From assembly GCA_965637545.1 (NCBI GenBank), contig OZ281495.1, forward strand, positions 22,010,001-22,074,000: a stretch of DNA of 64,000 bases, given 5' to 3'. The DNA comes from Phallusia mammillata. Taxonomy: Eukaryota. Below, piece by piece: positions 18,841 to 63,911 of the stretch; within the stretch, counting starts at the first letter, position 1, and every line of letters starts with the position of its first letter. Under the pieces are notes generated by a model. It searched no databases. It was given only the letters and a program-made list of their open reading frames with translations, and was not told where the DNA came from. The position numbers and the translations under genes are program-made.

Positions 18841-21800
18841 CTAATAAGGCACTTTAACATTTCCAACAAATGGACTTTGCAAATACGCGACTGCCTTGTG
18901 TTTAACGCAGTTGCGTTCAATTTCATAGTTTCCGCACAGAACGTAGTCATCGACAGATATTTCTTCCAGCATGTCCGACAAGTCAATATATCTACAACAA
19001 AAACCGATATAACACACAACAAAAAACGGTAAAAATGCATTTTTTATTGCTAACCCCATAGCTACAGCCTTGTTGAGGTGAAAAGCGTGATCCGCTGTGC
19101 GCGTGTGACCGGCGATTTTGCCATTCCGCCATATTGGTTCCTCGCCGAAAAGTTGAACCGGGCTAAAATATGAAATCGAACACGAATAAATGACTCATCG
19201 AGCTAATCTTAGTAATTAGTATATAACATACTCGTTTATCGTAAAATATATGAAGCATTTTTTCGGCTGACTTTTGCCTAACTCAGTTAATGCATCAGAT
19301 CCGATGTAATTACGATTGTCATCACACAAGTGGATCAGGCGCGCTTCAATCGGCGAATCGTCTGTTCGTAAACTTCCACCCCAGTTGTGAAAACCTTGAC
19401 AAGAAAGAAAATGTTTAAACATCTGTGAAATTTGTGTTCTATTGCATACAACGTTATAGGGACCATTGAAAATTAAAAAGTGCGAAGAGTTGGTTCTTAT
19501 AATTACTGATAATTTGCCTTACCCGCTTCGATTCCGAGTGATTTTATTGCACGGCATCCTGCGTCACAACCGCCATGTTTCGCAGCTTCTTGCATAACTG
19601 CTTCATAAATTATTACAGCTTGTTCATTTTTACATGTTATTTCATATCCCAACTCCCCGACAATAGAATTCCTGTCATCATAATAGTGTGCTTGCTAATT
19701 TTAAAATTAACGTATAGGCACACAATTTGTGCTGCATGGATCACCAATTACCTGATAAGCTGGACGTTGATATCAGAAATTTTGGAAAACATAAACTGCC
19801 CAGGCGCAAGCGTCTTTAAATTCTTTCCATGGAGCAGTTTGTCCAACACGATACGGCTATAAAAGTATGGGTTTGAAAAAGTAAAACATAGTATCATCGT
19901 AAAGAAGGGTTGTAAATTGCAAACATGAGAGACTTGGCAAACCTTTTAGGTCCTTGCAAACTTAGCATTGTAAGCTCATCAGTTCTGTCCGTAACTTTGT
20001 ATCTAAGGTTTCTTCCACTTAACACGTCGTCAATGTGACCTTTACAATATCCCGCGGTATCTTCTCTTACGTTCAGGTAATACTTGATCCCTGAACAAGT
20101 AACATGACATGAAGTATTATGTTTTTTTATAAATTTAATTTTATTTGGTATTTGGTAACAAATATATACCTATTGTGAAACAGTTTAGAATTGACCACAC
20201 CTGCTTTAGATTGACCAGCAGTATTAAGACACAGTAGCATTAAAATATTTTAAGAATGCCTGTCTTCAGCTTTTTCAGGCTCTTCAACGAAAAACAATTT
20301 GTTAGTTGGAGACGCTTTAGACAAAACTGAAACCACCCTATCATTTTCACGCGAGTGCCGTTTGTGTATTATGCTAGTTTTAAAATAGTAACAATTTTCT
20401 GCAGACAATACCATTACTACAACTGTTGCAGTGCAACATAAAAGCAATTAAAGATTGCCGTACAAGAACATTTAATCGTTGTTGTTTGTGATACGCAATA
20501 GTGATGCACCGAACCCGCCTAAAAAGGTTCGGGCCGAAACCGAATATTCGGCCACGAGGCCGAATAATTTCGGCCGGATCAGGCCGAACCTAAAATCCTG
20601 TTCTTATAGATGTTTTCAACTGAACCTTGTGTCGTTGATGCGAGTGAAGTGAATTATGACAAATCAAAATCACTTAGGCCTACACCATCTGGAAGCTTTA
20701 CTAAATTTGCAATATTTTGCAGACAACGTGGCTCGTATTTTATAGATACCACAATTAGTTAATTTATGACGTTTTGTATTGGCGAAAATGATAGTTTGGG
20801 CATTAATTCTATGCAATCAAAAAGTTCGGTTTCGGCCGAATTTTCAAAAAAGTTCGGGCCGAAACCGAAACATCGAAAAACAGCGTATTCGGCCGAAATG
20901 TTTCGGCCAACTGAAACTTCGGTGCATCACTAGTACGCAATACGTACACGATAATCTGCGTTAACCTATTGTGTGATAGCCGTGCGGGAAAAAAATCTTG
21001 ATAACCTTTTACTGAGGGTTTGGTGATGCGTTGTTTTTATGGGTTAAAATGCGAAATTTAAATATCGTTTGACGTGATGTTTTCCACAAGAAAACAATAA
21101 GGTCAGCTAAGCTTAGCAAGACTAACGATGCAAATTATTGAGTGAAACCATGGCTATTTATTGGAACGTGCTCATAAACTGGGTTGCTGCCTCGAAAATA
21201 CAGTTAAATTTTACCCAACGAAATTGTTTACTTCATGAGTTATAGCAGCGGTCTGGCACAATCGCTCTGCTCTGCGCCGCTGCAGTTAAAAGTATGTCAA
21301 CTAATTTAGGCGTGGTTCACATATTTTAGTCCGCAGTGGCTAACATCAGGTCAAAAATAACGCCAAAACCTTTCGATACATCCTATCGATTATATTGTTG
21401 TGGTAGAACATTTAGGTTTCGTTTGATGAAGGGTCATTCACAAAATAACGAGGGTAACTGTGTAAAGTATGTTAATTTAACAAAATGTTTTCCATATAGG
21501 CTCCCTTAAAGCCGATTTAAATATGCACGTCTTTGGCCGTTTCAAAATTGCACGTTTTAACGTCATGTGGGTTAACTAATAAGTAAATTGCTCATGTGTT
21601 TTTATTTAAGAGTATCTGGAAAAAATGTTGAACGAACTTAAAAAATAAAATAGAACAAAAAAGTGTTTTCATCGGAGCAGGGGACTCCTAATCAACCGTT
21701 TACATCTAAATGGGCAGTTTTTAACAATTGTTTTCTTTCGGCAAAGGTTAATATAAATGGCAAAGGTTAACAAACACTCACGGCCAAAGCTTATATGTTC

Positions 21801-24800
21801 TTCCAGGGCATATATTTATCGTCACATTACGTTTGTTCATTTTTTAAGATCATACCGTACCCCGCCATTTCTGCACAAACTACCAATGTTATAGAATAGA
21901 GACATAATAATATCTCACCACCATCTTCAGTGTCCATCTTACAAACAACAAGATCAGATTCAATCCCGCCCTTATCATTTAACATCAGGGTGTAGGTGCT
22001 CGTATTGCAGTTCGGGTTGGCAGTGACGTCAGAGGAGAAGAGAAGTGTAGCGGCCTTGGTGGCGTCTGGACCTTCCAGCACCAATTTACCCACAGAACTG
22101 GAGTTAAACACAGCACATGACGTTCGGCATGTTATGCACTCCCTTCCTATCTATACAAAAGTTCTTGTAATCAATCTAATCAAATCAAATCTTTTTCACC
22201 ATTTTTGTCTTGCTAAACGAAAAATATTTGCATTTGAATCATTTTAATCAAATATGGTAATAAGTTAGCAAAAAAGAAGATCTTACTATTTCATGAACTA
22301 GACCAGGATACCCAAACGTGTGGTCGTGTTTTAGTTGATCTCGATAGCCATAATCCTTATGAACTTCGTTTCCATACGCTCCATAAAAATCATAATCTTT
22401 GATTTCATGTTTTGTTTTGGGCATAAAATACGCCGGTACCTCAGAGTTGTATTCGTTTTTAAAAACGCAACCCCGATCCAGCAATGTCTGTTTAAAAACA
22501 TAACGTGAAACAAACAAAAAATTTCGGTTGTGCTTTTCAGCGGTTTTATGGTACCTTGTGAAGAGCATCTTTTCGGACATTTCTTCCAGCTAGGGGCTGG
22601 TCATTTGGAAACACAATGCCGTAATGTGTGACGTAGCTTTCGTGTGACCGCTCGGTAAGCCAAGTTTTATTGGAGACTAAACTTGATGGAAATCTTCTGC
22701 AAAGTTATCGGTGCGTTTATATCAGTGGTTCCCAGCGTTAAACATATACGTATGCGTTCTTAAATTGCCAACCAGAATAATTAATCATAATTGATCAGAA
22801 AGTACTGTTAAAGACATTTCGTTTATTTAAGTTTCGATTTATTGGTGTTACTTTTAAAAGCTTGTTTAAACCTAAATAACGGTATGTTACAGTCGTTATC
22901 TGAAACAAAGTTATAATTTTTAGACGAGGGTCTACAATTTAATGCTGGTTAGGTGGGTGAGCAAAGAAGGTTGGAAGTCGCTGTTTTACGCCTTTGCTGA
23001 CTTTCTTTAGTGAGTGTAGGTTACCTTATGTTCCAAGTAAACATATCGAGTTCGGGTTTGCCGCGGATAGCCATTAAAGCAATTTGTTTTCCAGCACCTC
23101 CGCCCAACATCATACCGCCGCCGTTAAAACCACTCGCGTGGAAAAACCCTCGTACGTCTGGGGACTCCCCGACAAGCGGTTTACCGTCAGGAGTAAAAGA
23201 TTCTGTACAAAATGTTGCGTTGATATAGGCTACTGATTTTTTTTAGGTCTAGATGTTTAAACCACACAAAATAGTACCGAAATGTGAACACCTAACCAGG
23301 GATTATTTAGTGTATCGTATCACACAGTTTAACTTCTTTTAAATCTTTATCGTGTTATATTTCTATTTTGGGTGGTATTTTACCTGGCCCACAGACAGTG
23401 CTGCGTATTCCCGACTTTGCAACTGCCGGCATTATTTCACAACCAGTTTCCAATAGCGGTCCGTACGTATCCCAATTTACATCATAAAGTCCAAATGCAA
23501 AATCGTTAGCCACCTTACAAAATTCAACAAATTAGAAATTTCGCCAGAATCATATACAAATGATATAAGCACCTTTTCGCATAAAATCGGGTTACTCTCA
23601 TACCCTCCAACTTGTAAAGTATCTCCCTGTCTTTTGATGTACATCGACCCATCATGATGCCGAACATTTGGTAGCTCACGAGCACCCTCAATCGGCTGAG
23701 TGATTGCATACGCTTGTCTGTAAACCACCTGTGGCGTCTCCACCCCAATCATCTGTTTGCAAACATTTGATTATAAATCCAATATTTGCCAATAACTATT
23801 ATTAAAAGAGAACTGTATTCTCAACATTCAAATTACACTCTGATCTTTAGGGTACGAAAAAAAACGCGCTGCCAAACGATTAAACGTATAATCCTCAAGT
23901 TTTAAAGACTAGAATCAGTGTGACTTTCGACAGTAACAATGAAGGGTACCGCTTTTCAATGTTTACAAACATACTTTTCCAATATTAGGAGCCCATACAC
24001 CAGCGCAGTTGATCACATGTCCTGTTGTTATTGTACCAATGTTCGTGTTCACTGAGGAGATGCGCCGTATCCCATAGTCGTCAGTTTTTGTAGAAAGGCT
24101 TGTAACTTTGCAACCTTCTAACACCTTTTCAACAAATCAAAGAATTTGTTATACGTTTTATTAAACACATTTTTGAGTCCTGTTTTACCTTTGCGCCATA
24201 TTTTTTAGCAGCTTTTGTGTAAGATGAGCAAGCTCCCGTGGGATCCAAAGTACCATCATTTGGACTGTACAGTGCTCCAACAAACTTTGAAGCATCTAGA
24301 AGAGGGTGGATTGAAGGTATTTCTGAATTCGAAATAAGCTGAGATTCGATTCCAAACACTTTCGCCAGCTAAAAACACAATGTTCCAACGCACCATGTTT
24401 ACTTTACAAATATTTTGCACCAGTATTAACGCGGCTATACTACAGCTATAGCTGGCGGACCACCAAAATACAAGTGGTTCTAAAAATTGAAACATGATAC
24501 ATTGATACAACAACCGGAAACAAAAAAGGCAATAGGGTGGCATTTCAAAATTTTGGTTTATTGTATTGCTGCAAAACATATCCAACTGTACTATTTCATA
24601 AGGCAGCGCAGCAGAAATCGTAACCCACAATACAATATTATGTTTTAGGACCTTTTTGTCTCACTCGCGAGGAGATTTTTGCTAGTCACCACTGCTGCCT
24701 TAAGTGCAAGCAGCGTCAGCAGTACACAAGTGATTAGTTATATATTAATCTTACCGTTTTCATTCGTTCGTAAGCCTTCATCCTTTGTGAGTTACATGCT

Positions 24801-25344
24801 GTGAACAACCCCCCGGTCTGAATCCAGCCTGTTTCGGTATTAACCTCTTGTGACAGTATTGACGTCATCAAGGCGTGTGTGTCAGTCACAATTTTCAAAT
24901 CCAATTCGTTCGTTCCCACTCTCCACAACAAACCTACAAATTTAGGGTTAATTAATAGCCTGACACGGACGTTTTTACAAATACCACAATCGACTTCATC
25001 AAAAAAACATAGCCTTTCCTCAATTGCAGATACAATATTAGCAGTTTACCAGAAGTGTGCCATGTTGTTCCAGCAGTCAATTTGTCTTTTTCAAGAAGAA
25101 CGACTTTTCCAGCTCCAAACTTAGCAAGATGATAAGTAGTACTACATCCAATACTTCCACCTCCAATTACAACTACATCAGCTTCCGTAGGTAACTGCTG
25201 CCTTGCATCAATGCTACTTTTACGATGTTGCCATTTTATGTTGTTAGTAAACGAGCTGCTGCGTAGCGTGCTGAGAGATATGCAATCAAAGTGGCAGGAA
25301 AATCCTGCTGACCAAAAGCCTTTCACAAGTTTGTGTGTAGACAT
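18841..25344 (-). CDS. SARDH-like: Sarcosine dehydrogenase-like flavoprotein, copy A (divergent; open reading frame intact)
   Basis: 16 exons: 25344-25050, 24933-24755, 24368-24189, 24124-23975, 23752-23573, 23513-23384, 23202-23025, 22696-22555, 22487-22287, 22150-21919, 20090-19943, 19856-19752, 19671-19523, 19394-19232, 19162-19055, 18991-18841. FAD motif [11 protein letters not shown], covalent-flavin motif [25 protein letters not shown]-protein-like C-terminal half (GGIESDL, LQGPKSR, GELGYE). All phases join without stops. Start codon choice is less certain. Confidence 0.92.
20499..20932. mobile_element. hAT-type MITE in intron 10 of SARDH-like copy A
   Basis: Perfect 15-bp TIR TAGTGATGCACCGAA / TTCGGTGCATCACTA; 8-bp flanks ATACGCAA / GTACGCAA (7/8); subterminal CCGAAA/CGGCCGAA repeats. 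Confidence 0.85.
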
Positions 25345-26516
25345 TTTCTGTACCCGATTCAATGATTGAGCTCAAAACGGTTGACTGCACAGCAAAAAGC
25401 TGCAAACTTCTTTGGATATATCAGCACTAAGCAAGCAGGTTTTTATGTTACAAATCAAATAGAAGACAAGTTCCTGGCATTTTGCCTAATTGTTGTTTAC
25501 CAGCTACAACCTAATCAATACTATATACAATTAAAACAACTACATTAGGTCTAGGTTTACGACGACCGATAAGATATTTCTCTCAGCCGTAACAACTAAC
25601 AAGTCAATCCATATGTCGCAATCATTTGCAAGGAAATACATGGGGTGCGACCTCGTCCCAACAAGCCGTTTCCCGTGCAGTAGTACTACCAAGCACCAAC
25701 TTAACTTAAAAATGTAAACCGCCTAGTCAAAACAGACTGGTAAAAAGAACGAACCCTACGCTAGTCTACTATCTAAACATAACCTTTGTACATGTAAATA
25801 TAGCATTTTCGCGTTTTGCATATGCAGGACAGTAGACTGCTTGTGTAGGCTAGTCTTGGTACTTTTACATTATAGAATTCGTTTGTACAGCCCAAAGCAA
25901 TTTGTTTGTAGCGTGAAGTATTCAGGATATCAGTCAGGTCTGTTGGACAAATTCAGCAAATCAGTCGTGTTTGTTCAGCAAACACCTCGAGATTACAGGA
26001 TCGTTCATTGGTACCTTTGTTACCTCGATATTCATTTGACAATAATTCAGAAAAAGTGCTGTATGCATCATCAAAATGGGGTTGACTAGTGGCAGAGCCA
26101 TTTTACCGTCTTTCGTGGTGTATTTTCATTTTAGCAACTTGAGTGAAATCCCCTTAGGAGTAAGGTCCCTTAAAGTCTATGTAAGGCCTCATTTACTTTA
26201 TGTTTGATTCATTTCACGTTGTTTAATTTGAATTACCTTTGTGGCATTTTGGGGAAGAATAACAATATAACGGGTTGGTAAATGTTGCTTCAAGTATATG
26301 TTCGAAAGTAGGGATAAACCAAACAATGTGCACTGGACTGACATAACCAAAATTGAATTGTTTTAGGCAGTTTATTGCAAAACACATAGCACCAATAGCG
26401 TTAAGCGTGAAATTAGGGGACTAAAAACGAGGCATATAAAAGGGGAATATAATCAGTAAGGTTAAACCGCCATGGATTACTGCTACAATAACGTTAACAA
26501 GTCCAAGTAGGTAGAG

Positions 26517-27151: not shown

Positions 27152-30100
27152 TCATGTGGATTTAAACAAGCCACGCACACGACGTCGTTTTGGATCAAAT
27201 GGACTGTTCAAATACACATTCGCCTTGTGTTTGACAAAGTTGCGTTCAATCTCATACTTTCCGCCAAGAATATAGTCATCGACACTTGATTTATCATTTT
27301 CCGGAATGTCGACGTAGCTGAAACAAAAAAATATGCGAAAAAAAAGAAATAAAAAATATATCTAATTTCGAATGATAAAACATGTACACCTTTTTACTGT
27401 TTTTGGTGAGACACATCTTTGCAGGCTCACAAACAAATAATCTATTCTAATTTAAAAACCCTTGGCTAAATACAGGAACATAAAATGTAGCAACATTCAT
27501 CACATTACCGATTTTGTCTGATATATTTTTGAATGATCGATTGTAACACTTTTCGGTTTCAGTCGAGTTTTCAAAAAAAGTACGATCCAAAACCGAAACG
27601 ACGACCAAATATTTCAGCCAACCGAAACTTCACTAGCTGATACAATTAGAAAAATTTCAAGGTGAAGACAATTCAAAGATTCAAAGTGTATTTAAAGGGC
27701 ATTCACTAGACCACACCTTTGTAGTTAAAATAGCAAATCAAATAACACGAGCACTTACCCCATGCCCACACCCTTGTTGATATTAAACGCGTGAACTCCA
27801 TTTCGGGTGAAACCAACCACTTTTCCATCCCGCCATATTATCTCCTCCCCAAAAAGTTGTACTTGGCTAAAGCACGATCATCAAACAAAGTGATTAGTTG
27901 GAACTTTGTAGGCGTCAAAACACTTAAAAATGCAACGCAATCTTACTCGTCAACTGTAAAAAAGGCTAGTGATTTTTTGGGGCGCTGTCCTCTCATTTCA
28001 GCTACTGCAGCAGATCCATGATAATGCCGATCGTTGTTACACAAGTGCAACAAACGCGACTCCAGCGGCGAGTCGTCGGTACGCACACTGTGTCCCCAGT
28101 GGTGAAAACCTTGGAAAAACATATTTTTGTAAATACTTAACAAGCATTTAAATAAACATTAGCACCACTTCTCATTAAGCACTAAACAACCAGTCAGGTC
28201 GATTGCTAGTGACACAACTACTTTTCTACCTCATTGACAAAATGAACTTGCATGTGTTTTGAAGTATGACAAGAATTGATTGTCCCAGATCACCAGCTCA
28301 AGACGGGTTAAACGGGTGCCAAAACATTCAAAAAAATATGGTATGTAAACAATGCGTACAAACTCATCACTTGGTATAAGCATTTGCAAACATTGGTGCT
28401 TATTGCTTACCAGCTTCAATGCTTAGTGATTCCATAGCCCGATATCCTGCATCACGGCCTCCATGCTTTTTTGCTACTCCCATGATTGCCTCATAAACTT
28501 TCACAGCGTGTTGACTCTCACATGACACCTCGTATCCCAATTCCCCGACGAAAGAACGTCTAAACGATAAGCCGTATGAATTTAGGCATATGGGAATATG
28601 TGCAGCATACGAGACAGGCAAAGTTGCTTGTAATTCGACCTTCGACGGGCTCACCGCTCAATTGGTAGAGCGCGAGTCACTGAAAGACTCCTGTCGTGGG
28701 TTCGAATACTACCGCAGGCTAGATTTTTCTAGCCTACGCCTTGTCGTATGGGAATGCTTGGTGACCGGCTGATTTGGTATGACGCCTTTATTAGGTCTGA
28801 CACACTATATTTTAGGAATATTAACGAAATGTTCTTTGTGTTAACAAAGTATTTCAACTTACCTCAAAATACCCACATTAATTCCGACAATGTTACTCAA
28901 CGCGAAATGGCCGAATTGCAGACTTTTGGTGACATCACCTGTGATCAGCTCCTTCAGTACCGCTCGACTGTCAAAAATGCATAATAGTTGTCAGCACGAT
29001 GGCATAAACTTATTTCCATAACAACAACAAAACAACGCTTTTTTGGTGCGGAGGTATAATTATCACAAAATGGTTAGTGAAAATGTAATGGTGAAAAACT
29101 AACCTTTTTGGCCCTTGCAAACTCAACGTTGCAAGCTCCTCAGTTCTGTCTTTCACATTGTAGTTGAGGCCACTTGTACTTAACACATCACTAATATGAC
29201 CTTTACAGTATTCCGTAGTTGCTCCCCCAACCGTCATAAAATAGTCAAAATCTAAAAACAAGTTTGGTACATTAAAAAGGGGTTTAGGAGTAACGAAGGA
29301 TTTAGATTTGAGTTTGCAATACGAAGTAATTTCTTCAATATTGCCACAAAAACCTTTATATAACGAATGAACACATAAATCACATGCCTTTTATTTAAGA
29401 TAAATTTTGTCGGTTTCTTGAGTGTGTGTGTTTACACCAAAAAATATGAGTTAAAACGTTCATTAAAATTCGTGAAAACAGAAGCTCCACATATTTCTAA
29501 AATCTAAACGTTCCATGGTTTGCCATTATTTTAAATTCTTTAGGTCCAAACGACTGAAATTTCAGGTCCTGTGACCTTTTTGCAACGATAATTTGCAAAA
29601 AGATATCACACAGTCCACTAAAGTCAACCTTACCATGATCTCCAGTGTCCATTTTACACACAACAAGATCAGATTCAATCCCTCCCTTATCATTTAACAT
29701 CAGGGTGTAGGTGCTCGTATTGCAGTTCGGGTTGGCAGTGACATCCGAGGAGAAGAGAAGTTTGGCAGCCTTGGTTGCGTCTGGACCTTCCAGCACCAAT
29801 TTACCCAAAGAACTTGAGTTAAACACAGCACATGACGTTCGACATGTTACGCACTCTTTGCTTATCTGTAGTGATATGATATGCTTGTGAGAAAATAATT
29901 TAATCGCATAAAATGAGAGTTTTGATAATTTTTTGGGTTAAAAATAAAAATAACAGAATGTTATGATGATATTGTAGGACAAACATTTAAAAAATGCAAA
30001 TGTGACCAATACCGCTTCGTGGACAGGTCCAGGGTATCGGTAAGAATACTCGTGGTTGAGAAGGGTTTTGTATTGGTAGTCTTGGTGAATTTTGTTATCG

Positions 30101-33100
30101 TATGCCCCGTAGAAGTCGTACTTTTTCACTTCGGCTTTCGGTCCATCAGTGAAATAAGCTGGTCGCTCCCATCCGTGTTTTTCCTCGTAAAAGCAACCCC
30201 GGTCCAACAAAACCTTTGGTCACATACAAACGGTCTCAATTTTCGTTAAGTCGACGCCTTGCTTAGCATTTAACTGGACGTACTAGATGTACGGAAGGCC
30301 AGACACGTTTGCTTGTTGACAGTGTATTTGACCTTGATTAACCAAGTCATATCTAGTCAACTCTTAAAACACTTCTAAGAAAATCCACTTATCTACAGAT
30401 TGGAGCTGGGGACATATGCTTTAAACCTTAATATTGTCGACAGATGACAAGGCAAACATAAAAAAAAGGAAAATGACGGAATTAGCCAGAAAGTAGAAAA
30501 AGTCTGCATAGCAGGCTATAGCAGGCAAAATCTGAATGTGCACCACTACTTTATAGTTTATGGAAATTTTATTGTCTGAAATCTGCATTACGTTAAGGCA
30601 AGTATTAATACTTTATTTAAGTATCAACTTTTGTTACCTGATGTAGAGCGTCCTTTCGCATGTTTCTTCCTGCCAGGGGCTGATCGTGTGGAAACGACAT
30701 ACAATAATGCTTCGAGTATGTTTCGTGAGATCTCTCGGTAAGCCACGTTTTGTTTGTGACCAAGCTCGAAGGAAATCTCCTGCAAAGAAATAGAAGGGCA
30801 CTTTCTCCACACTGCCATATACACTATGCGACCTAGATGAAAACTGCCGTACTATATTTTACAATTTGTTACACAGTTTTACAAAAATTCCAAATCACGA
30901 TCTTCAAATTTCCGAACGCCTTGACAAGGCGAATTTACATGCTATCCAAAACCGTGAGATTGTTGTGAAAACCACAAGTTAAAAGTTTACCGTATGTCCC
31001 ATGGAAACATGTCAATTTCTGGTTTTCCACGTAATGCCCAAAGCGCTATTTGTTTTCCACCACCTCCGCCGAGCATCATGCCGCCACTGTTAAACCCACT
31101 GGCGAAAAAAAATCCTCGTACTTTTGGCGATTCGCCACACAGTGGCTGTTTATCGGGTGTAAAAGATTCTAAACACGGTATAGATGATAAACTGGGATGT
31201 TAAAAAATGAGACTCTAATTTTTAATGTGGTATGAACTCTTCGTTTTTTTACCGGGTCCACAAATTGTTGATCGAATTCCCGTTTTTGCAATGATAGGCA
31301 TAGCGTCACAAGCAATAGCTAAATGTCGACCAAATACATCCCAGTCTAATGTATAGAGACCAAATGCAAAGTCGTCCGCAACCTACAAAAACAATTTGAA
31401 TGACTATAAACGTTAAAAAGTGCACAAAATGAAACAACGATGTGTTTATGATTAAAACTTCACTTGCTTCTTTGCAGAAGATTGGGTTTGCCTCATAACC
31501 TCCCACTTGCAGTGTATCGCCCTGCCGTTTCATGTAAACCGAACCGTCGTGGTCACGAACGTTCGGAAGATGACGAGCGCCCTCTATCGGCTCGGTCACA
31601 ACGTACGCATGTCTGTACGTAACTTGGGGAATGGCAATGTGGACCATCTGTGCAACAGGATGTTAAGATCATAAACATCACTTGTTGTGCAGCTTCAACG
31701 TACCTGACTTATGTTGGGCGCCCACACGCCTGCGCAGTTTATCACTTGGCCAGTTTTAATCGACCCACGGCTTGTTTTTACTGCAGAGACTCTTTGGATT
31801 CCGAAATCGTCTAACCTCGTGTCGATTCCTTCGACGCCGCAGCCCTCAAAAACCTAAGGCGATCATGACTTATGACATAATAAGATACCAACGGTGAAAA
31901 CGTTCTTTTATGTTTTTGAAAGGTTCACTGGACACATTTTAACATTTAAAGCTTCCTCCCCAGTTACAGTTTTTATGGCATTCGATTTTGGCGTGTGTTT
32001 TACCTGAGCACCATACTTTGCTGCTGCTTTGGTGTAGGAAGTACAGGCTCCGGTTGGATCCATAGTGCCATCCAGTGGATTATACAGAGCCCCAACATAT
32101 TTTGAACTATCCAGCAGGTGATGCACTTGAGGTATTTCAGCCGCCGATAAAATGTGAGTTTCGATTCCAAAGACTTTTGCAAGCTGTTACAAACAGTTAA
32201 ATAAAAATTCCTTCGAACCGGAGTCGAACCAGTGACCTATGGATATCTGACGGTTTGCAACCACTACAGTCCACCGCTCTACCAACTGAGCTATCGAAGG
32301 ATGCAATTATGCATGTGGAAAAGCGCCACTTATGCTTTCGAATCCATATGCTTTTGGGCGGCATTTGAAGCGACGCTAAACCAACAATCATTGTTCCCGT
32401 TTCCAGGCAGCAACAATTTAATCCATAGAAATTAGAGATGTGTAAGCCTATCGCCGCATAATTTAACAGTTTTTTGTGCGACATCGAAACGTAATAAATC
32501 GCTGACAGAATAAATACCGTTAATATTAACTTACCGTTGCCATTCGTTTGTATGAGTCCAATCGGGTTTGGTCATTGGCTGTAAACAACCCTCCCGTTTG
32601 TATCCATCCCGTTTCACTGTCAGTCTCCTGCGGTAATATAGTCGTCATCAAGGTGCGGGTATCGTCCACAATCTTCATTTCAAACTCATGTGGCACAGCT
32701 CTCCACAGTAAACCTAAATACAACATGCACTAAGACAGTGGTTCTCAAACTTTGTATTTCAAAAAACGAAACTTGATTGCAGGATTTTAGCTAGTTACGC
32801 AAAATTGCGCATAACAATGATCCGAAGACAGCATCTGACATCACAGACAAGAAAAAACACATTACCATTGTGCGCGAACAATTGCATTTTTGTTAGTTGT
32901 CATGCAATAAAGGCTATTTGTTGAGCAATGGAGACGATTCTCAATTCTACTTTGATTCAAACTTATTCAACAAGATTATAGAATTACTTCAACCTTTTTG
33001 CGGTCCCCCCAAAATTGCCTCACGGACCCCACCGCTGTACTAAGAGGACCTTACATTTTTTCAAAGACTGCTCTAATTGATTGGTTCCATGAATTAAAAA

Positions 33101-33814
33101 TAGGTTCCAACAAACTTTACGCTTTGGTAAAAAATGTATGTATAACATAAAAAGGTTAAAACATCTGTGATGATACTTGTGACATAACCTATTTTTTCTT
33201 CATGGCCTTGGTATTACAAACCTTTCTGCCATATAGTTTAATAGTGTCGCAATTACTTTTTCGCATCAAAACAATCAGAATGACTCTCTACTTATATGGC
33301 CACAATTAGGCCACCAAGTATGGCTCATTTCTCATTTAGTTTAATTTGGTTTTAGTGTATGACCATCAGAGCCAATGGGAAGATAAGTTCACTAACCTGC
33401 TGTGTGCCATGTTGTTCCAGCAGTCAGTTTATCTTTTTCAAGAAGAACAACCTTCCCAGCTCCATACTTAGCTAGATGATAAGTTGTACTGCAGCCAATA
33501 CTCCCTCCCCCTATCACAACTACATCAGCTTCTGTAGGTAGCTGCTGGGTGCTGTTGGTTCCATTCTTGCGACTGGAGGAATGCTGATGTAAATTGAATT
33601 TGGTTGCTGTCCTGCTGCAGTTTAGTGTGCTGAGAAGTCTGCATAGTAAAATTTGCATTAACACAGCATACCTTGTTGTTGTTGTGTTTTTTAAATGCTC
33701 TTAAATGTGTAGTAAATTGTGCAAGGATATATGTTACCTGACGCTTTGTGCAAAATATTTTTGTTTGTCAAGATTCAGATGAAGTTTGTTGCATCTCCTG
33801 ATAAATCTCATCAT
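27152..33814 (-). CDS. SARDH: Sarcosine dehydrogenase-like flavoprotein, copy B (closest to canonical SARDH motifs)
   Basis: 17 exons: 33814-33738 (basic mitochondrial-type presequence [13 protein letters not shown]...), 33638-33397, 32713-32535, 32183-32004, 31853-31704, 31647-31468 (GC donor), 31382-31253, 31168-30991, 30779-30638, 30213-30013, 29865-29634, 29251-29104, 28967-28863, 28559-28411, 28109-27947, 27866-27759, 27317-27152. Motifs [64 protein letters not shown]. Internal exon lengths equal those of copy A. Confidence 0.94.
27545..27635. mobile_element. Degenerate right-end fragment of the MITE family seen at 20499-20932
   Basis: CGGTTTCAGTCGAGTTTTCAAAAAAAGTACGATCCAAAACCGAAAC...CAGCCAACCGAAACTTCACTAG aligns by eye with the right end of the 20499-20932 element. 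Confidence 0.55.
28647..28728 (+). ncRNA. tRNA-like Pol III unit (tRNA pseudogene or SINE head), antisense within an intron of SARDH copy B
   Basis: A-box/D-arm GCTCAATTGGTAGAGC, 5-bp stem GAGTC/GACTC with 7-nt loop, B-box GGTTCGAAT, TTTTT at 28724-28728. The acceptor stem does not pair. Confidence 0.65.
32209..32300 (-). tRNA. tRNA-Tyr(GTA): tRNA-Tyr (GTA) with 19-nt intron, inside intron 3 of SARDH copy B, same strand
   Basis: CCTTCGATAGCTCAGTTGGTAGAGCGGTGGACTGTAG-[TGGTTGCAAACCGTCAGAT, 32263-32245]-ATCCATAGGTCACTGGTTCGACTCCGGTTCGAAGGA. Perfect 7-bp acceptor stem, anticodon GTA at 32267-32265, intron after position 37, downstream TTTTT terminator. Confidence 0.96.
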
Positions 33815-54000: not shown

Positions 54001-56024
54001 CTTAAAAGGTAAAGAGGTTTTTAGAAAGTGAAAAATTTAGATGTGTTTTTCACATCAAAAAGTTAAAAGTAAACGTGCTTAAATTATTCTACCCACGTCT
54101 TTTACGAGGTGAGGATTCATTTCATATCCGCCAAATTGCAGAGCATCACCTTGTGGTTTAATATACACGGTACCGTGATCCTTTATAATCGGTGTGTTTA
54201 AAATTCCCTTTATGCCTTGGGTCACAATGTAAGCATGTTGAAAAGTTAACTGCGGAATTCGAACTCCGGCCATCTGCATAAAATCAAAATAGAACATAAA
54301 TATGTCGTTTTTATGCGACGCTTGTTTCGCACCTTTTTATTATTCCTTTATGCGACTAAAGTGTATGTAAACGGGTGTAACTGATGTGGCCGTCATATCA
54401 CTGATGATGGCATGAGCATTTGCCGAAACGTTTGAACAATAAAGCATGTCGCCTTTTACGTCTATTTGGGCCGTTATTTTCACCATTAAACTTATGAACA
54501 GATCCGTATATAGTGTTCCAAAGAAAATAAATAGCACCAAACTATGTCATGAAAAGCAAACACACCATGTTTACCTACCTTTCCGATGTAGGGCGACCAG
54601 GCGCCGGCGCAGTTTACAACATTGTTTGTCTTGATGGTTCCCTTGCTTGTTTCCACACCGACAACTCTTTCAAGACCAAGATGGTCTTCGGCTTTTAAGA
54701 TACCATTTACGCTGCAATTTTCAAATACCTGTGGACAATAACCGATTGTTTTCCACGCCCCATATGAAGTTTAAATTTGTACATTTGTAATTTACACTAC
54801 TGTTGAACCAGAAATCACAAATACTGCAGAATACTACCTAAACTACCCAGAAGTTTTGACATTATTTTTACCATGGCGCCACGATGCTGAGCTGCTTTAA
54901 CATACGCCATGCAATATGTTGCGGGATCTATAGTTCCATCACCTGGCGAATACACAGCTCCGTATACATCATCGACATTCAACAGTGGATGGATTACCTT
55001 TGCCTCTGACGGCGTTATTTCTTGTATTTCGACTCCAAGCCCTTTAGCAAACTTGGAAGACGGTTATAAAAAGTTATTAGAAAATTGTATGTGACCAGCT
55101 GCTTACTGATGTCTGAAGCGTAATATCTTTGTATTCTTCCTTAGACTTTGCTGTTAAAATTGTGCCAGTACGTTGCCATCCGGCACTATCGCCATTTTCC
55201 TCAGGTAGTACCTTGCTTATTAAATCTCGTGTTTGCAGTTGTAACAGTGTTTCTGATTCGCTGCCACGAAAACTCCACAAAATTCCTACAATATACAATT
55301 TACGACATAAGAAAAGGTGATCCAAGCATTTTAGGGGCCAGGTTGCAGCAGTTGTTTGTGTGGCCCTGGAGAGGATAAAATGTGCTGGAACGAGATTTTT
55401 CTGACACCCCATTAAACACTAATCGTCTAAATAAGCCGCAGTTTGCATCAAAAACAGAGACCAAAATGCTATACTTTCAAACTTTCAAACTGGACAGGTA
55501 AATCATAAAATTCCGTATAGCTGTTATGTACCATGCTCATATATTTTTGGTCTATTTGCAAACTGCTTTATGGCTCACAAATTCAAAATAAACCTTATTC
55601 GTGTGCGTTGATGTCATATGATGCTTTTGCTTTATTGTTGCGTTTCTCCTTACCAGCCCATTGTAAATGTTTGTGTTTAACTAACCTACAAATAGAGCTT
55701 GTTCAGTAGTTTACCTGCTGTATGCCAGGTTGTTCCAGAAGTAATTTTGTGTTTTTCAACAAGTACAACTGAACCACCACTTTGCTTTGCAAGGTGGTAA
55801 GCAGTACTGCATCCGACACTTCCACCACCGATTACAACCACATCAGCTTCAGTTGGAAATTTGGCCCGGTCTAAAGTGTTGTCACTCTTGCTTTTGTGAA
55901 TTGATGATTCATATGGCACATCCTTAACATCTTGTGATTTGTAACGAGTGGAATGAAGATAAGTTCTTGTACACCTCAAAGTGGCCAATTTATTCAAATC
56001 TCGCATTCTGGTAGTAATTGACAT
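51068..56024 (-). pseudogene. SARDH-like: Sarcosine dehydrogenase-like copy C with an internal deletion causing a premature stop
   Basis: Exons 56024-55715, 55285-55107, 55051-54872, 54728-54579, 54273-54097, 54000-53871, 53501-53324, 53263-53122, 53042-52827, 52427-~52272 (truncated), 52250-52143, 52075-51927, 51825-51663, 51438-51331, 51257-51068. Relative to copy D, the 3' part of exon 10 and all of exon 11 are missing; read-through gives FMYFFFYFV-stop at 52253-52251. Confidence 0.8.
54301..54531. mobile_element. ~230-bp insertion in intron 4 of copy C, possibly a Penelope-like retroelement remnant
   Basis: Absent from the homologous intron of copy D (61635-61709); flanked by ATAAAT on both sides; contains CTGATGA...GAAACGTT followed by AATAAA. 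Confidence 0.5.
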
Positions 56025-58400: not shown

Positions 58401-61400
58401 CTACAGGGCATTCAACTTCTTTGCGAGCTGCTCTTGTACATTTGATGAATATTTTCCACGAATTCGTTCAAACCGTGGATCGAACGGGCTTGTGGTGTAA
58501 GCCTTGGCCGGGTGTTTCACCGCCATTCGTTCAATTGCAAAGTTTCCCTCCGTAATTTCTTTTTCAGTTATACCAGGAACGTTTACGTACCTGCAAAGGT
58601 TATGACGGATTTAACATATGTGGGAAAAAGTTTGCTGTATTGGATACCTCTATTTATTCTTACCCGTATCCCAGATTTGTATCCAAAGCATAAGCGAAAT
58701 CAGCGTGACGCAGGAAGCCAACAACTTTGTCGTTAAACCAAATCGATTCGTGGCCAGTTATTGGGACATCCCTGCAAAAAACATCTCAGCGTTACAACAT
58801 TCCACTTGTCATGTAAGGCCCAAGCACATCTGTTTTAACCCGGTTTAGAACATTTCATTTTTCTCACGTGTCAATGGTGAAACAAACAAGTTTTTTGGGC
58901 AATGGTTTCTTCCGAAGTTCGGCCAGAGCTTTGCTACCGATGTAATCTTTAGAATCTTCGCAGAACCGCAATAAATCCGCTTCACCTGGTGTGTCAGCAG
59001 CGTGAATGCTATGTGACCAATGATGAAAACCTGAAACGATAACGTAATAAACACAATTTGCAAAAAAACGTTTCATTCACAGCAGACAGCATCTTATCTT
59101 TAAAGGATACAAATTAGTAGCTTACCACATCACAATAGAAACCTATCATGCAGTAGCTACTGTTGCAAAAATTCGACGAAGCTGTGCGGTCAGAAGCATT
59201 GCAACACAAATAGGCTTAATGTTCAATAGCCTTTTTCGATTTACGTGCATCATGTTTATATACTTTTAAGTGTACGTTGTATTTTTTTACGAACAGTTTG
59301 ACGACAACAATACCTGTCTCTGAGCTTAACGATTCCATTGCACGGTATCCGGCCACGCATGCGTTGTGTTTGTCTGCTTGCTCCATTATAGCGTCATGGA
59401 TGCATTTTACGTCATCGCTGTGGCAATGAACTTCGTATCCAAGTTCTCCTACAAACGATAACCTTAAAGGGGAGGGGTTATAGTAACTGAAGGATTGGAG
59501 AAGATTGGTAATTTTCAATAAATTCTACCAACCTGCCAAGCATCACATTACGACCAGCAATTTCAATGTTACTCCATTGAGAATATTTTAGCTTCTTTAG
59601 GATATTGCTTTCTTGGACAATGGGCTTGAGGATGTCGCGACTGAACAAAATAACGAAGAACTAAGAAACATGTCATACGAATGAATGCGAGTGTTAGAAC
59701 AATATTTAGTAAGCTTATGATGATTCCTAGATATCGCGTCACCTCCAACAAAAAATTGAAAAAAAACATGGTTTAGTCTAGCAACCTTTTTGGTCCTTGG
59801 ACACTAAGGATTGATCGTTCTTCGGTGCGATCTTCCACAATACAATTCAGACCCTTCCTCTGAGCAATGTTTTGCAAGTACATTTTGCAATGTAATGCAC
59901 CCGAAGAGCTGAAGGTCACGTAATATTCGTTTTCTAAAGGTATATTTCAATCAGTAAGTGCAAACAGACGCATGAACAAATAATTTTACCACCAGAAGCG
60001 TTTTTTACTCTCGTTGCAATCACATCGCCTTCGATGCCAGCTCTATCGTTCAGCATCAGTGTGTACATAAACTGTCCGTCTTCTGATTTAACTAAATTCC
60101 TACTAAAAGCTATTTGTGCCAGTTGGTCCGCGTCTGGCCCCGTTAAGAATATTTTTGCCATGTAAGAAGAATCAAGCAGAATAGCTGAAGTTCTGCAGGT
60201 CAAACATTCCTTTCCCACCTGTCACACAAAACCTTTATAGGTAACGCACTACGCATGTGACCTTGACCAATCGATTAGGTAAAAGCATTACTTACAGTTT
60301 TGTGGGAGTCAGGAAATTCAAATGTGCAATCGTTTGTCACCGCATCATAATACGGGTACGGATCGTGTTTCTTGTTGTCATATGATCCATAGAAATCGTA
60401 GTCAAGGACCTTCAGGTTACAATTGGGTTTGTTTTGACCGTCTTTTATGTAATAAGCTGGACGTTCAAATCCATATCGGATACCAAAGAGAGCTCCAAGG
60501 TCTGAGTCGGTCTATGCATAAAAGATAACATGAACATGAAACACTGTATCTTGATAATGATTAGTGTCCTGAAGCTACCTGATGAAGTTTGGTTTTCCGT
60601 TGATTTCGTCCTCCAAGGTTGTGATCTCTAGGGTAAACCAAACTAAAGCGCTTTGCAAATCTCTCATGGCACGTCTCTGTCAGCCATTTGTTATAATTCG
60701 TGTAGGAAGTCTGGTATCGCCTGAACATACGAAACAATTTGAAATAAACGCTTTGCCCCGGTCCTCGGCTACTTTAAGTTTTACCTGATGTCGCAGTTGA
60801 AGAGATCAATTTCAGGTCTCCCGTGCGTCACCCAGTGGGCTAACTGTCGTCCCGCTCCTCCTCCCATCATCATTCCTCCACTGTTGTATCCGCTACCTAC
60901 AAAGAATCCTCGCACTTCAGGCGACTCGCCCATGTTTGGTTTTCCATCCGGTGTGAATGATTCTGCAAAAATGCAAGCATTCGATCATGCTATGTAATTG
61001 AATTTGAATTGAAATGTCCTCATGGTGTTATAACTGCCTTTCACCTTTGTCATCTAATTCTAGGTGTAAATGAAATTTTGCATTTGTCGAATCAATTTAC
61101 AATGATATAATGAGTAACGAACTTCTGTTACACGAATACGATCGGTTTCGAGAAAGTTTTAACCACACGATTATTTTATAAATAGAGGTTAATATGTTGC
61201 TCACCATGTTTTTTTGTGTCCAAATGGCAAAAGTTATAGCATACCTGGTCCGCAAACCGTCGATCTTATTCCAACGTTTCCAACAGCTGGTATTCGATTA
61301 ACTGTCGCGTCGAAGTGTTGTGCGAAAATATCCCAATCCAAGTCGTAAAGACCAAAAGCAAAATCAACTGGAAGCTAGGAGAATGTAAAAGAAGAGTTTT

Positions 61401-63911
61401 CAAGCGAGTTTGGATTAAGGCATTCTGACAGTGTTTGTTTCTACATTCAAAACTCACGTCTTTTACTAGGTGAGGATTCATTTCATATCCGCCAAATTGC
61501 AAAGCGTCACCTTGTGGTTTAATATACACGGTACCGTGATCCTTTATCATCGGTGTGTTTAAAATTCCCTCTATGCCTTGGGTCACAATGTAAGCATGTT
61601 GAAAAGTTAACTGCGGAATGCGAACTCCAGCCATCTGCATAGCATAAAAACAAAACATAAATAGCACCAAAATATGTCATAAACAAGCAAACAGACCATG
61701 TTTGCTGACCTTTCCGATGTAGGGCGACCAGGCCCCGGCGCAGTTTACAACATTGTTTGTCTTGATGGTTCCCTTGCTTGTTTCCACACCGACAACTCTT
61801 TCAAGACCAAGATGGTCATCGGCTTTTAAGATACCATTTACGCTGCAGTTTTCAAATACCTGGGCAAAATAAACAGGAAGTTTTACCGCCAAAAGAATAC
61901 ATCAAGAAGTTTTACCGCCAAAAGATCATAAACCACAAATAGCCTACTATAGGAAGCAGAAAACTACCTAAAACTTCAAAATTGTTTTACCTTGGCGCCA
62001 CGATGTTGAGCTGCTTTAACATATGCCATACAATATGTCGCGGGGTCTATAGTTCCATCACCTGGCGAATACACAGCTCCGTACATATCATCGACGTTCA
62101 ACAGTGGATGTATTTCCTTTGCCTCTGCTGGCGTTATTTCTTGTATTTCAACTCCAAGCCCCTTTGCAAACTTTAAGGACGGTTTCATTGTACTAGTTTT
62201 ATAACGTTTTATATAACAGTGGAACTACTTACTGATGTCTGAAGCGTGAAATCTTTGTATTCTTCCTTAGTCTTTGCTGTTAAAATGGTGCCAGTACGTT
62301 GCCAACCAGCACTATCCCCATTTTCCTCGGGAAGTATCTTGCTTATTAAATCCCGTGTTTGCAGTTGTAATAGTGTTTCCGATTCGCTGCCACGAAAACT
62401 CCATAAAATTCCTACAATACATTCGTACGCAAGGTAACAAGTGAGCTTAATCTAATGCAGGGGTCGGCAACCTTTTAAGCGACGCGTGCTAATTTACTTG
62501 TTATGTTCATGTGGAAATGACATCGCGTGCCATCATTTTTCTGAGTATTAGTGGTTTGTGCCAGCTGATATCAATAATAAGGAGAAGCAGAGTGTTTTGT
62601 GCATCTAGGCTGGATTTTACCACTTTGGCACAATAAAAAATGAAAACAAGCAGTGTAACAGGTTAAAATTAGTACGCCAATATAAACACGCAAATCGCCA
62701 GGGGTTGCCGACCCCTGGTCTAATGTAAACACCACAATCTCCAGTTCTTGTTGTAAAGCCAAATCAACAAGCAATCGTTAGTCCAGGGGTGGGGAACCTG
62801 CGGCCTAAAGGCCGCATGCCTTGTACCGTTAGCGTCTGGATACATATCCAGGATACACAAATATCTGCACACAAGTTACGAAAGGAAACAGCGACTAGCT
62901 AATCCCCAACACACAATCAAACGCGCAACACAGACGCTAACGTTACAAGGCAAACACACACAATCTCAAACACAAGTTATAATTTGCGAACTTTATGTTT
63001 TTATATGTTGATTGCTACAGTATCTACATTTTCAAGTAACATACAGAGTCGATTGTTCGCGCACTATATTTGTATTGTTTTATTATTGCTTGTGACATAT
63101 TAAATTGACATTAAAACAATCCCACGCAAAGTGATTTTACAACACTAAACTTAACTCATTCTGTATTTTACTTTCGAAAGGAATGAACTAACTTTCAGTT
63201 GGTAACTCAACAGTTTTATTTTGCCAATATATTTTCAGTTTTATAAATATATTTAGCTTGGACTGCAAGTGCTCGAAAAAAATTGCCAAAGGACCGTTAT
63301 GAAAAAAAATTAAAAAGTTTGAGAACCGCTGTTCTAAATATTATTTTTCATTTTTTGTATTAGTTTTATTGTTGTTTTGATTCACCTAATTCGTGATTGT
63401 CGTGGTCAACTCGTGTGTCGCTGTACTTACATACTTTATTGTTTGCAGTTACGTTTCTTATTGTCATACATTTTTTAATTTTGTAACTGAAGCCCTCCAA
63501 TTTTGAATGTTTGTATTTAACTAACCTACCCTTGCGGTTTATTTTTACAAATAGAGCTTGTTCAGCATGCCATAAGTAAAAACTATCAAAAATCCTGTTA
63601 CCTGCTGTATGCCAGGTTGTTCCAGAAGTAATTTTGTGTTTTTCAACAAGTACAACTGAACCACCGTTTTGCTTTGCAAGGTGGTAAGCAGCACTGCATC
63701 CGACACTTCCACCACCGATTACAACCACATCAGCTTCAGTGGGAAATTTTGCCTGGTCCGTGGATTTATCACTTTTGCTTTTGTGAATTGATGTTTCATA
63801 TGGCACATCCTTAACATCTTGTGAACTGTTGCGAATGGAACCAAGGCTAGCCCTTGTACACCTCAAAGAGGTCAGTTTATTAAAGTTTTGCAATCTACTT
63901 GTAATTGACAT
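58401..63911 (-). CDS. SARDH-like: Sarcosine dehydrogenase-like flavoprotein, copy D (intact, recent paralog of C)
   Basis: 16 exons: 63911-63602, 62411-62233, 62170-61991, 61859-61710, 61634-61458, 61374-61245, 60962-60785, 60720-60579, 60511-60296, 60218-59990, 59933-59786, 59640-59533, 59462-59314, 59030-58868, 58771-58664, 58590-58401. Motifs [67 protein letters not shown]. Confidence 0.93.
62458..62717. mobile_element. hAT-type MITE in intron 1 of copy D
   Basis: Perfect 15-bp TIR CAGGGGTCGGCAACC / GGTTGCCGACCCCTG; 8-bp flanks ATCTAATG / GTCTAATG (7/8). Confidence 0.88.
62784..63331. mobile_element. Composite MITE cluster in intron 1 of copy D (hAT-like ends with a nested small inverted-repeat element)
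   Basis: hAT-like left end CAGGGGTGGGGAACC at 62784; nested 21-bp inverted repeat GCCTTGTACCGTTAGCGTCTG (62818-62838) / CAGACGCTAACGTTACAAGGC (62931-62951), 20/21; hAT-like right end TTTGAGAACCGCTG at 63318-63331 that does not match the left end exactly. Confidence 0.55.

What the first reader, a model, noticed from the sequence alone, without database searches (positions are those of the whole stretch)
23573..23752. Copy A replaces the putative catalytic His with Gln and has eroded conserved motifs while keeping an intact ORF
Seen: copy A reads YRQAYAIT (CAA at 23716-23714) where B has YRHAYVVT and C/D have FQHAYIVT. A also has RHHDGSMY (B: RDHDGSVY), KNEYNSEVP (B: EEKHGWERP), LNVREDT (B: MTVGGAT), RNSIVGE (C/D: RLSFVGE) and DAGCRA (B: DAGYRA). 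All 16 exons splice in frame without stops. Knowledge: this His aligns with His225 of the His225-Tyr259 dyad of Arthrobacter dimethylglycine oxidase, and the xxSFVGE segment lies in the folate-binding T-protein-like domain. Inference: copy A is either a pseudoenzyme or regulatory subunit (a parallel to PDPR) or a neofunctionalised enzyme.
Basis: partly seen in the sequence, partly recalled or inferred. Interest (0 to 1): 0.75.

Follow-up and report, generated by a model that had tools for sequence, protein, structure and literature searches.

The report
Sea-squirt sarcosine dehydrogenase copy lacking catalytic histidine
One of four neighbouring sarcosine dehydrogenase genes in the sea squirt Phallusia mammillata is intact, transcribed and kept by selection, yet has glutamine in place of the catalytic histidine, so it is a working diverged duplicate and a modest biochemical lead.

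Summary
Copy A (minus strand, 25344..18841, 16 exons, 896 aa) reads YRQAY, with CAA at 23716-23714. B, C and D have His there. By profile alignment this column is His225 of Arthrobacter dimethylglycine oxidase, and the partner Tyr259 is kept in A.

Copy A is not a dead gene:
- Spliced contigs from three public runs match 11 of my 13 modelled introns in the laid stretch and carry the Gln codon unchanged.
- A-B dN/dS is about 0.12. A's protein branch is only about 1.5 times B's.

The family is true sarcosine dehydrogenase (SARDH; B is 52% identical to bat SARDH). A and B are a lineage-specific duplicate pair.

"Eroded motifs" is overstated. A keeps 103 of 118 near-invariant SARDH positions, more than copy D (100). 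The truly unusual changes are H281Q, D300H (RDHD to RHHD) and G492N.

A genomic exon from another sequencing sample also has Gln at this site. Two Styela clava paralogs have Leu or Ile.

Pseudoenzyme versus altered enzyme is unresolved. I favour a still flavin-bound enzyme with changed or weakened chemistry. This is a new variant of a known kind, of moderate interest. The scan had already noted the four-gene cluster on this same window.

The parts
18841..25344 (-). Copy A, SARDH paralog: 16 exons, 896 aa. Exons (high..low): 25344-25050, 24933-24755, 24368-24189, 24124-23975, 23752-23573, 23513-23384, 23202-23025, 22696-22555, 22487-22287, 22150-21919, 20090-19943, 19856-19752, 19671-19523, 19394-19232, 19162-19055, 18991-18841.
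   Evidence: GT-AG model with an open frame. Spliced contigs confirm introns 1, 3, 4, 5 and 7-13. Pfam DAO, FAO_M and GCV_T match single exons.
23573..23752 (-). Exon 5 of copy A (aa 269-328), the stretch given in the finding.
   Evidence: Contigs X1 rec4 and X2 rec10 cover it with 0 differences.
23714..23716 (-). CAA = Gln281, at the column of the catalytic His (DMGO His225).
   Evidence: Profile alignment to 1PJ5 and 5L46. The column is H in 131 of 135 cluster representatives.
23657..23659 (-). CAT = His300, replacing the Asp of the RDHD motif.
   Evidence: The column is D in 142 of 147 representatives and 13 of 13 non-tunicate SARDHs. It aligns with DMGO His253 and with the DMGDH Asp.
23639..23641 (-). 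TAC = Tyr306, the retained partner of the dyad (DMGO Tyr259).
   Evidence: alignment; invariant in all four copies.
25057..25059 (-). His96 in TTWHTSG, at the position of the histidine that carries covalent FAD in this family; retained. The neighbouring Ala is Ser in A.
   Evidence: Alignment block. The role of this His is taken from PMC5082570 (His91 of hDMGDH). The equivalence is by motif, not structurally tested.
21919..22150 (-). Exon 10 of A, a gene-conversion tract shared with B exon 10 (29634-29865).
   Evidence: Nucleotide identity is 0.91 against about 0.66 in the other exons, and the flanks are unalike. dS is 0.25 against 2.2.
27152..33658 (-). Copy B, canonical sister paralog (16 exons, 890 aa; His in YRHAY, RDHD, HGWERP).
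58401..63911 (-). Copy D, the group-II paralog used as comparator (16 exons, 918 aa; His kept).
54097..54273 (-). Exon 5 of copy C (His kept). Copy C lacks the second half of exon 10 and all of exon 11.

Best explanation
Copy A is a live, lineage-specific duplicate of the mitochondrial flavoenzyme sarcosine dehydrogenase. It arose by tandem duplication of the A/B ancestor after the Phallusia line split from Ciona. It has since evolved about 1.5 times faster than its sister B, but still under strong purifying selection.

It keeps:
- the FAD-binding Rossmann motif;
- the histidine at the covalent-flavin position;
- the tyrosine of the catalytic dyad;
- the FAO_M linker;
- the folate-domain GE.G.E motif.

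It has replaced two otherwise near-universal residues of the substrate-side loop: the catalytic His (Gln281) and the Asp of RDHD (His300).

My inference is that the protein still folds, binds flavin and carries out amine oxidation with altered or weakened proton abstraction. That would mean a different substrate, pH profile or rate. In other words, it is a sub- or neofunctionalised enzyme rather than a dead gene or a pure scaffold.

Shown here: gene structure, transcription, splicing, selection, residue identities and phylogeny. Inferred: flavin binding, mitochondrial location and any catalytic activity.
For: - **Structure and expression.** Intact 16-exon ORF. Spliced RNA-derived contigs from 3 runs match 11 modelled introns and carry CAA.
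- **Selection.** A-B dN 0.26, dS about 2.2, omega about 0.12. Branch dN is 0.16 for A against 0.10 for B.
- **Phylogeny.** A and B are sister at 100/100, also with exon 10 masked. The alternative placement is rejected (p-AU 7e-7).
- **Conservation.** A keeps 103 of 118 near-invariant SARDH columns, including GGGSIG, WHT.G, the dyad Tyr, GFN.GG and GELGYE.
- **Residue identity.** The Gln column equals DMGO His225 and the retained Tyr equals Tyr259.
- **A second sample.** A genomic exon from run DRR090687 has the same splice sites, Gln (also CAA) at the same column and Gln at the RDHD Asp. It shares the A/B-only GAR signature, and shares Q13 and I39 with A only. This suggests the Gln is old and retained.
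Against: - No activity, flavinylation or localisation data exist.
- The catalytic His is H in 131 of 135 family representatives, so its loss could well abolish normal catalysis.
- The few polymorphisms seen in RNA contigs are 5 nonsynonymous to 4 synonymous. That is looser than the long-term omega, though the sample is tiny and low-depth contig differences may be errors.
- dS is saturated, so omega is approximate and recent relaxation cannot be excluded.
- Orthology of the DRR090687 exon rests on 60 residues, and its organism is unknown.
- The A/B sister relation could be inflated by past gene conversion. Exon 10 shows that conversion does occur.
Confidence: 0.55

Rival explanations
1. Copy A is a pseudoenzyme. 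It is a folded, possibly flavin-binding SARDH-derived protein that no longer oxidises amines and serves as a regulator, binder or scaffold. This is the PDPR-like reading.
For: - Loss of the catalytic His, together with loss of the neighbouring invariant Asp.
- G492N/W>S/R>V in the HGWERP motif at the start of the folate domain.
- Purifying selection without the catalytic base.
- Recurrent His loss in other tunicate SARDH paralogs (Styela clava, L and I), which also lost the GE.G.E motif. This shows that non-canonical derivatives of this enzyme do persist.
Against: - A keeps features a pure scaffold would not obviously need: the covalent-FAD histidine position, the dyad Tyr and almost all FAD-domain and folate-domain invariants.
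- No partner protein is known.
- PDPR was not compared here.
Confidence: 0.27
2. Copy A is a redundant duplicate under relaxed selection and on its way to becoming a pseudogene. The Gln is simply the first disabling hit.
For: - A's branch is 1.4-1.6 times longer than B's.
- A has 8 unique changes at invariant columns against 2 for B.
- Polymorphisms are 5 nonsynonymous to 4 synonymous.
- The neighbouring copy C has already suffered a deletion.
Against: - There is no stop, frameshift or lost splice site in 2.7 kb, even though synonymous sites are saturated since the duplication.
- Omega is about 0.12.
- Transcripts are spliced correctly.
- The same Gln occurs in a second sample's intact exon with canonical splice sites.
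- The excess at invariant sites is not significant (p = 0.20).
Confidence: 0.13
3. The Gln is an assembly or sequencing error, or a private allele of the sequenced individual.
For: It is a single third-position change (CAY to CAA).
Against: Contigs from runs of a different study (X1, X2) cover the codon with no difference. Two further holders carry 97-100% of the sampled words.
Confidence: 0.02

Closest known systems
Mitochondrial sarcosine dehydrogenase (SARDH) of animals, e.g. Desmodus rotundus XP_053775002
   Same: Same DAO + FAO_M + GCV_T architecture and length. A lies inside the tunicate SARDH clade, which is sister to vertebrate SARDH. It has the FAD motif, the WHT.G histidine, the dyad Tyr and the GE.G.E motif.
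   Different: Gln instead of the invariant catalytic His; His instead of the invariant Asp in RDHD; NSEVP instead of GWERP. A is 46% identical to bat SARDH, against 52% for copy B.
Arthrobacter globiformis dimethylglycine oxidase (PDB 1PJ5) and human/rat DMGDH (5L46, 4PAA)
   Same: Same fold family by sequence. The exon-5 profile aligns gap-free over the His225 column, and over the Tyr259 column after a loop insertion.
   Different: These enzymes have the His-Tyr dyad. A has Gln-Tyr. At A's His300 position DMGO naturally has His253 (RHQD), while DMGDH has Asp. A laboratory study of His-225 and Tyr-259 mutants of DMGO exists (Basran et al. 2006, seen only as a title in the reference list of PMC5082570). 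Its kinetics could not be read here.
PDPR (pyruvate dehydrogenase phosphatase regulatory subunit), a DMGDH-family protein used as a regulator
   Same: It shows that this fold can be retained for a non-oxidative role. This is from general knowledge, not tested here.
   Different: A belongs to the SARDH clade, not to PDPR. No PDPR sequence was compared, and no partner is known.
Styela clava 'sarcosine dehydrogenase, mitochondrial-like' XP_039268974 / XP_077967794
   Same: Tunicate SARDH paralogs that also lack the catalytic His (Leu, Ile).
   Different: They belong to the other tunicate paralog group (with C and D), so the loss is independent. They are far more derived: 29 of 118 invariant columns changed and the GE.G.E motif gone.

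Membership tests
Sarcosine dehydrogenase (SARDH) family | N-terminal FAD-dependent oxidoreductase (DAO, PF01266) domain with a GxGxxG motif | tested here: met
   Exons 1, 3 and 7 hit PF01266 (E 4e-12 to 3e-7). GGGSIG is present.
Sarcosine dehydrogenase (SARDH) family | FAO_M central domain (PF16350) followed by the GCV_T folate-binding domain (PF01571) | tested here: met
   Exon 8 hits FAO_M (1.8e-13). Exons 10 and 13 hit GCV_T (3e-15, 2.5e-9).
Sarcosine dehydrogenase (SARDH) family | C-terminal GCV_T_C barrel (PF08669) | tested here: inconclusive
   The single-exon queries for exons 14 and 16 gave no Pfam hit at E <= 0.01. The region aligns with other SARDHs. The spliced protein could not be submitted whole.
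Sarcosine dehydrogenase (SARDH) family | Histidine for covalent 8-alpha-histidyl FAD in the TTWH(T/S)(A/G)G motif | tested here: met
   A reads TTWHTSG (His96). Actual flavinylation is not testable here.
Sarcosine dehydrogenase (SARDH) family | Catalytic His of the His-Tyr dyad (DMGO His225) | tested here: not met
   Gln281. The column is H in 131 of 135 representatives.
Sarcosine dehydrogenase (SARDH) family | Catalytic Tyr of the dyad (DMGO Tyr259) | tested here: met
   Tyr306 is aligned with Tyr259.
Sarcosine dehydrogenase (SARDH) family | Phylogenetic placement within the SARDH clade | tested here: met
   ML trees place the tunicate clade (100/100) next to vertebrate SARDH. The hit names are SARDH.
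Sarcosine dehydrogenase (SARDH) family | Sarcosine-to-glycine oxidative demethylation with THF and electron transfer to ETF | not testable with these tools
   Needs enzyme assays.
Pseudoenzyme / regulatory DMGDH-family protein (PDPR-like) | Loss of catalytic residues while the fold stays under selection | tested here: inconclusive
   One of the two dyad residues is lost. Selection is retained (omega about 0.12). The other catalytic features are kept.
Pseudoenzyme / regulatory DMGDH-family protein (PDPR-like) | Documented binding partner or regulatory role; absence of activity | not testable with these tools
   No data.
Processed or decaying pseudogene | Stops, frameshifts, lost splice sites, no transcription, omega near 1 | tested here: not met

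The most novel reading that the evidence does not exclude
Tunicates maintain a class of SARDH-derived proteins that have repeatedly given up the catalytic histidine. Examples are Gln in Phallusia copy A and in a second sample's exon, and Leu or Ile in Styela. Copy A would represent a conserved Ascidiidae protein with a new substrate or a non-catalytic role in mitochondrial one-carbon or amine metabolism.
Probability: 0.3. Interest if true: 0.55.

Novelty: new variant of a known kind. Interest (0 to 1): 0.38.

Why it matters
SARDH has no solved structure. The role of the active-site histidine in this enzyme group is known mainly from bacterial DMGO and from DMGDH. A natural His-to-Gln version, expressed and kept by selection next to a canonical sister copy, gives a ready-made pair. 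Swapping residue 281 between A and B would test how essential the dyad histidine is, and whether its loss goes with a new substrate or a non-catalytic role. For annotation, it warns that 'sarcosine dehydrogenase-like' genes in tunicates are not all equivalent enzymes.

Tried and rejected
- **Word searches.** The search for homologous proteins with exon 5 of A, and again with its 97-aa open stretch, returned no candidates. The length filter and word index make this uninformative.
- **Submitting the spliced protein.** The 896-aa spliced protein has no reference, so I did not submit it to structure prediction, whole-protein Pfam or the big searches. The His225 equivalence rests on a sequence-profile alignment.
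- **Literature.** Leys 2003 (PMC175785) and Tralau 2009 (PMC2719421) are not held. Basran 2006 was seen only as a citation. Searches for the run and assembly accessions found nothing, so the organisms of DRR090687, SRR25569774 and ERZ22157276 remain unknown. No paper linking SARDH to ascidians surfaced among the 12 listed hits of a loose search (any 2 of 5 terms).
- **dN/dS method.** YN00 failed on saturated pairs, so only NG86 values are given.
- **Rejected: general erosion of the folate domain.**
- **Rejected: FNSS instead of FD.S as an anomaly.** Bat and moth SARDH also have Asn there.
- **Rejected: pseudogene.**
- **Rejected: assembly error.**

Full report
**What is there.** The minus strand of the window carries four tandem genes of one family. 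tblastn with the exon from the finding, and tblastx of the window against itself, locate them at about 18.8-25.3 kb (A), 27.2-33.7 kb (B), 51-56 kb (C) and 58.4-63.9 kb (D). An earlier follow-up in this scan names the genome as Phallusia mammillata. I did not test that.

I built gene models from open frames, paralog similarity and GT-AG sites.
- A has 16 exons, 25344..18841, 896 aa.
- B has 16 exons, 33658..27152, 890 aa.
- D has 16 exons, 63911..58401, 918 aa.

All three are uninterrupted and share the same intron phases. C lacks the second half of exon 10 and all of exon 11, and runs into a stop.

**The observation.** Exon 5 of A (23573-23752) reads [18 protein letters not shown]..., with CAA at 23716-23714. 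B has YRHAY. C and D have FQHAY.

**Which residue is it?** I searched a profile of the four exon-5 peptides against PDB sequences. It aligns gap-free over the histidine column with human and rat DMGDH (…VQHQY…) and with Arthrobacter DMGO. In DMGO the segment starts at Met213, so the aligned histidine is His225. The invariant Tyr of the exon (GSMYIK in A) falls on Tyr259.

The hDMGDH structure paper states that in the bacterial enzyme a His-Tyr dyad deprotonates the substrate amine. It also says the dyad is present in the human enzyme, with the catalytic histidine on the flavin re-face (PMC5082570).

**Family.** Single exons hit Pfam DAO, FAO_M and GCV_T. An exhaustive profile search with exon 5 found 453 representatives at E <= 1e-3. 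The named ones are sarcosine dehydrogenases: bat, moths, Styela clava 'SARDH-like' and Ciona savignyi. B is 52% identical to bat SARDH and A is 46%.

In ML trees the tunicate sequences form one clade (100/100) next to vertebrate SARDH, with two old paralog groups.
- Group I holds (A,B), a gene I modelled from an ENA assembly (L002), and C. savignyi H2YWY7.
- Group II holds (C,D), C. savignyi H2ZAI2 and two Styela genes.

A and B are sisters (100/100), also when the converted exon 10 is masked. Forcing B together with the other group-I genes, without A, is rejected (p-AU 7e-7). That group was named after seeing the first tree. The A/B duplication therefore seems to post-date the split from Ciona, unless past gene conversion homogenised the pair.

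**Is A alive?** Contigs of three runs from one study, laid on 19380-25370, skip exactly my introns 4, 5 and 7-12. They show intron 3 with an aligner slip whose 'between' letters are the end of exon 3. Their loose ends equal the far sides of introns 1 and 13. Introns have no depth. Such joined forms mean spliced RNA, so A is transcribed and processed as modelled. Two contigs cover the Gln codon without a difference, which rules out an assembly error.

Outside exon 10, A-B dN is 0.26 and dS about 2.2 (saturated), giving omega about 0.12. Three-taxon branch dN is 0.16 for A against 0.10 for B. Tree branches are 0.34-0.36 against 0.22-0.25. After that much synonymous change, an unconstrained 2.7-kb frame with 15 introns would not stay intact.

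The nine contig polymorphisms in A are 5 nonsynonymous and 4 synonymous, and two of the nonsynonymous ones lie in the presumed presequence. The sample is too small to judge, but it is the one hint of present-day relaxation.

**How eroded is A?** I took the 118 columns that are near-invariant in 13 non-tunicate SARDHs, from amoeba to bat, and counted deviations:

| Sequence | Deviating columns |
|---|---|
| A | 15 |
| B | 9 |
| L002 gene | 10 |
| D | 18 |
| C. savignyi group II | 23 |
| Styela paralogs | 29 |

A-only changes are A98S, H281Q, D300H, L340V, F345Y, S399G, D429N and G492N. B-only changes are P169H and Y616F. Given A's faster branch, 8 against 2 is not significant (p = 0.20).

In the folate half only 2 of 21 near-invariant columns differ in A, the same number as in B. 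GELGYE is intact. The FNSS motif, in place of FD.S, is also found in bat and moth.

What is exceptional is concentrated in exon 5 and at the start of the folate domain.
- The catalytic His is H in 131 of 135 representatives.
- The Asp of RDHD is D in 142 of 147 representatives.
- HGWERP has become YNSEVP.

At the Asp position DMGO itself has His253. I could not assess whether A's His300 lies near enough to matter.

**Relatives with the same change.** Only four of the 135 representatives that cover the column lack the His.
- P0002 has Gln.
- Two Styela clava proteins have Leu and Ile.
- One unnamed fragment has Ile.

P0002 is a genomic exon on a 937-bp Logan contig of run DRR090687. It has the same acceptor and donor positions, CAA at the same codon and RQHD in place of RDHD. 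It carries the EGAR signature found only in A and B. It shares Gln13 and Ile39 with A alone, and nothing with B alone. This points to an A-type orthologue in another ascidian in which the Gln has persisted. The evidence is 60 residues long and the organism is unknown.

The Styela cases are in the other paralog group, so they are independent losses. Those proteins have also lost the GE.G.E motif.

**Reading.**
- Copy A is a functional duplicate, not a pseudogene. Confidence is high.
- Whether it still catalyses amine oxidation is open. I favour a flavin-bound enzyme with altered or weakened chemistry (0.55). Everything else needed for catalysis is kept, which a pure scaffold would not obviously require.
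- A pseudoenzyme is the main rival (0.27).
- Early decay comes third (0.13).

No step here shows activity, flavinylation or mitochondrial location.

**Novelty and score.** This is a new variant of a known enzyme kind. A specialist in flavoprotein amine oxidases would find a naturally selected His-to-Gln SARDH next to a canonical sister a useful test pair, but not a great surprise. Interest is 0.38.

Noticed in passing
window 21919-22150 (A exon 10) vs 29634-29865 (B exon 10): An exon-limited gene-conversion tract. Nucleotide identity is 0.91 against about 0.66 in the other exons. dS is 0.25 against 2.2. The 100-200 nt intron flanks are unalike. A contig in run X2 with 7 differences over 21945-22092 carries B's Lys at codon 580 (the one difference checked against B), so it is probably B's transcript laid on A.
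   Followed up: partly
window 52100-52430 (copy C): Copy C's exon 10 breaks off after about 47 codons and abuts the pyrimidine tract and exon 12. Reading on hits a stop after ...FMYFFFYFV. Exon 11 is absent.
   Followed up: partly
window 31460-31468 (B intron 5 donor): At the position homologous to the GT donors of A, C, D and L002, copy B has GAA|GCAAGT, a probable GC-AG intron. An in-frame GT lies 42 nt downstream as an alternative.
   Followed up: no
window 20380-20980 (intron 10 of A): A repeat element with an internal direct repeat (20521-20550 / 20846-20875). It has very high contig depth (50-200 against 2-6 for the exons) in all four runs, with many loose ends. It looks like an abundant, transcribed dispersed repeat.
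   Followed up: no
P0050/P0154 and P0064/P0156 (Styela clava XP_039268974, XP_077967794): Two Styela SARDH-like paralogs have Leu or Ile at the catalytic His and have lost the folate-domain GE.G.E motif. They sit on a very long stem (0.87) in group II. They are stronger pseudoenzyme candidates than copy A.
   Followed up: partly
L003 and L004 (Logan SRR25569774): One unidentified sample holds a canonical exon 5 (P0003, YRHAY/RDHD). It also holds a diverged one (P0036) that keeps the His but reads VRSAEG instead of VRDHDG. This is another tunicate-like SARDH paralog with a changed active-site loop.
   Followed up: no
alignment column 846 (A residue 378, SFTPD-x): The His of SFTPDH is invariant in 13 of 13 non-tunicate SARDHs. 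It is replaced in every tunicate sequence examined (G, K, R or Q). This is a clade-wide change of an otherwise universal residue.
   Followed up: no
L002:3930-18260: A full A/B-type SARDH gene in ENA assembly ERZ22157276. It has the same 16-exon structure but introns two to three times longer (a gene of about 14 kb). No ATG lies upstream of the FAD motif in the exon-1 frame, so the start may be on a further exon.
   Followed up: partly
window 18841-63911: The two ancient tunicate SARDH paralog groups, (A,B) and (C,D), still lie within 45 kb of each other on the same strand. They are separated by the HIF-alpha/ETHE1 block noted by other readers.
   Followed up: no
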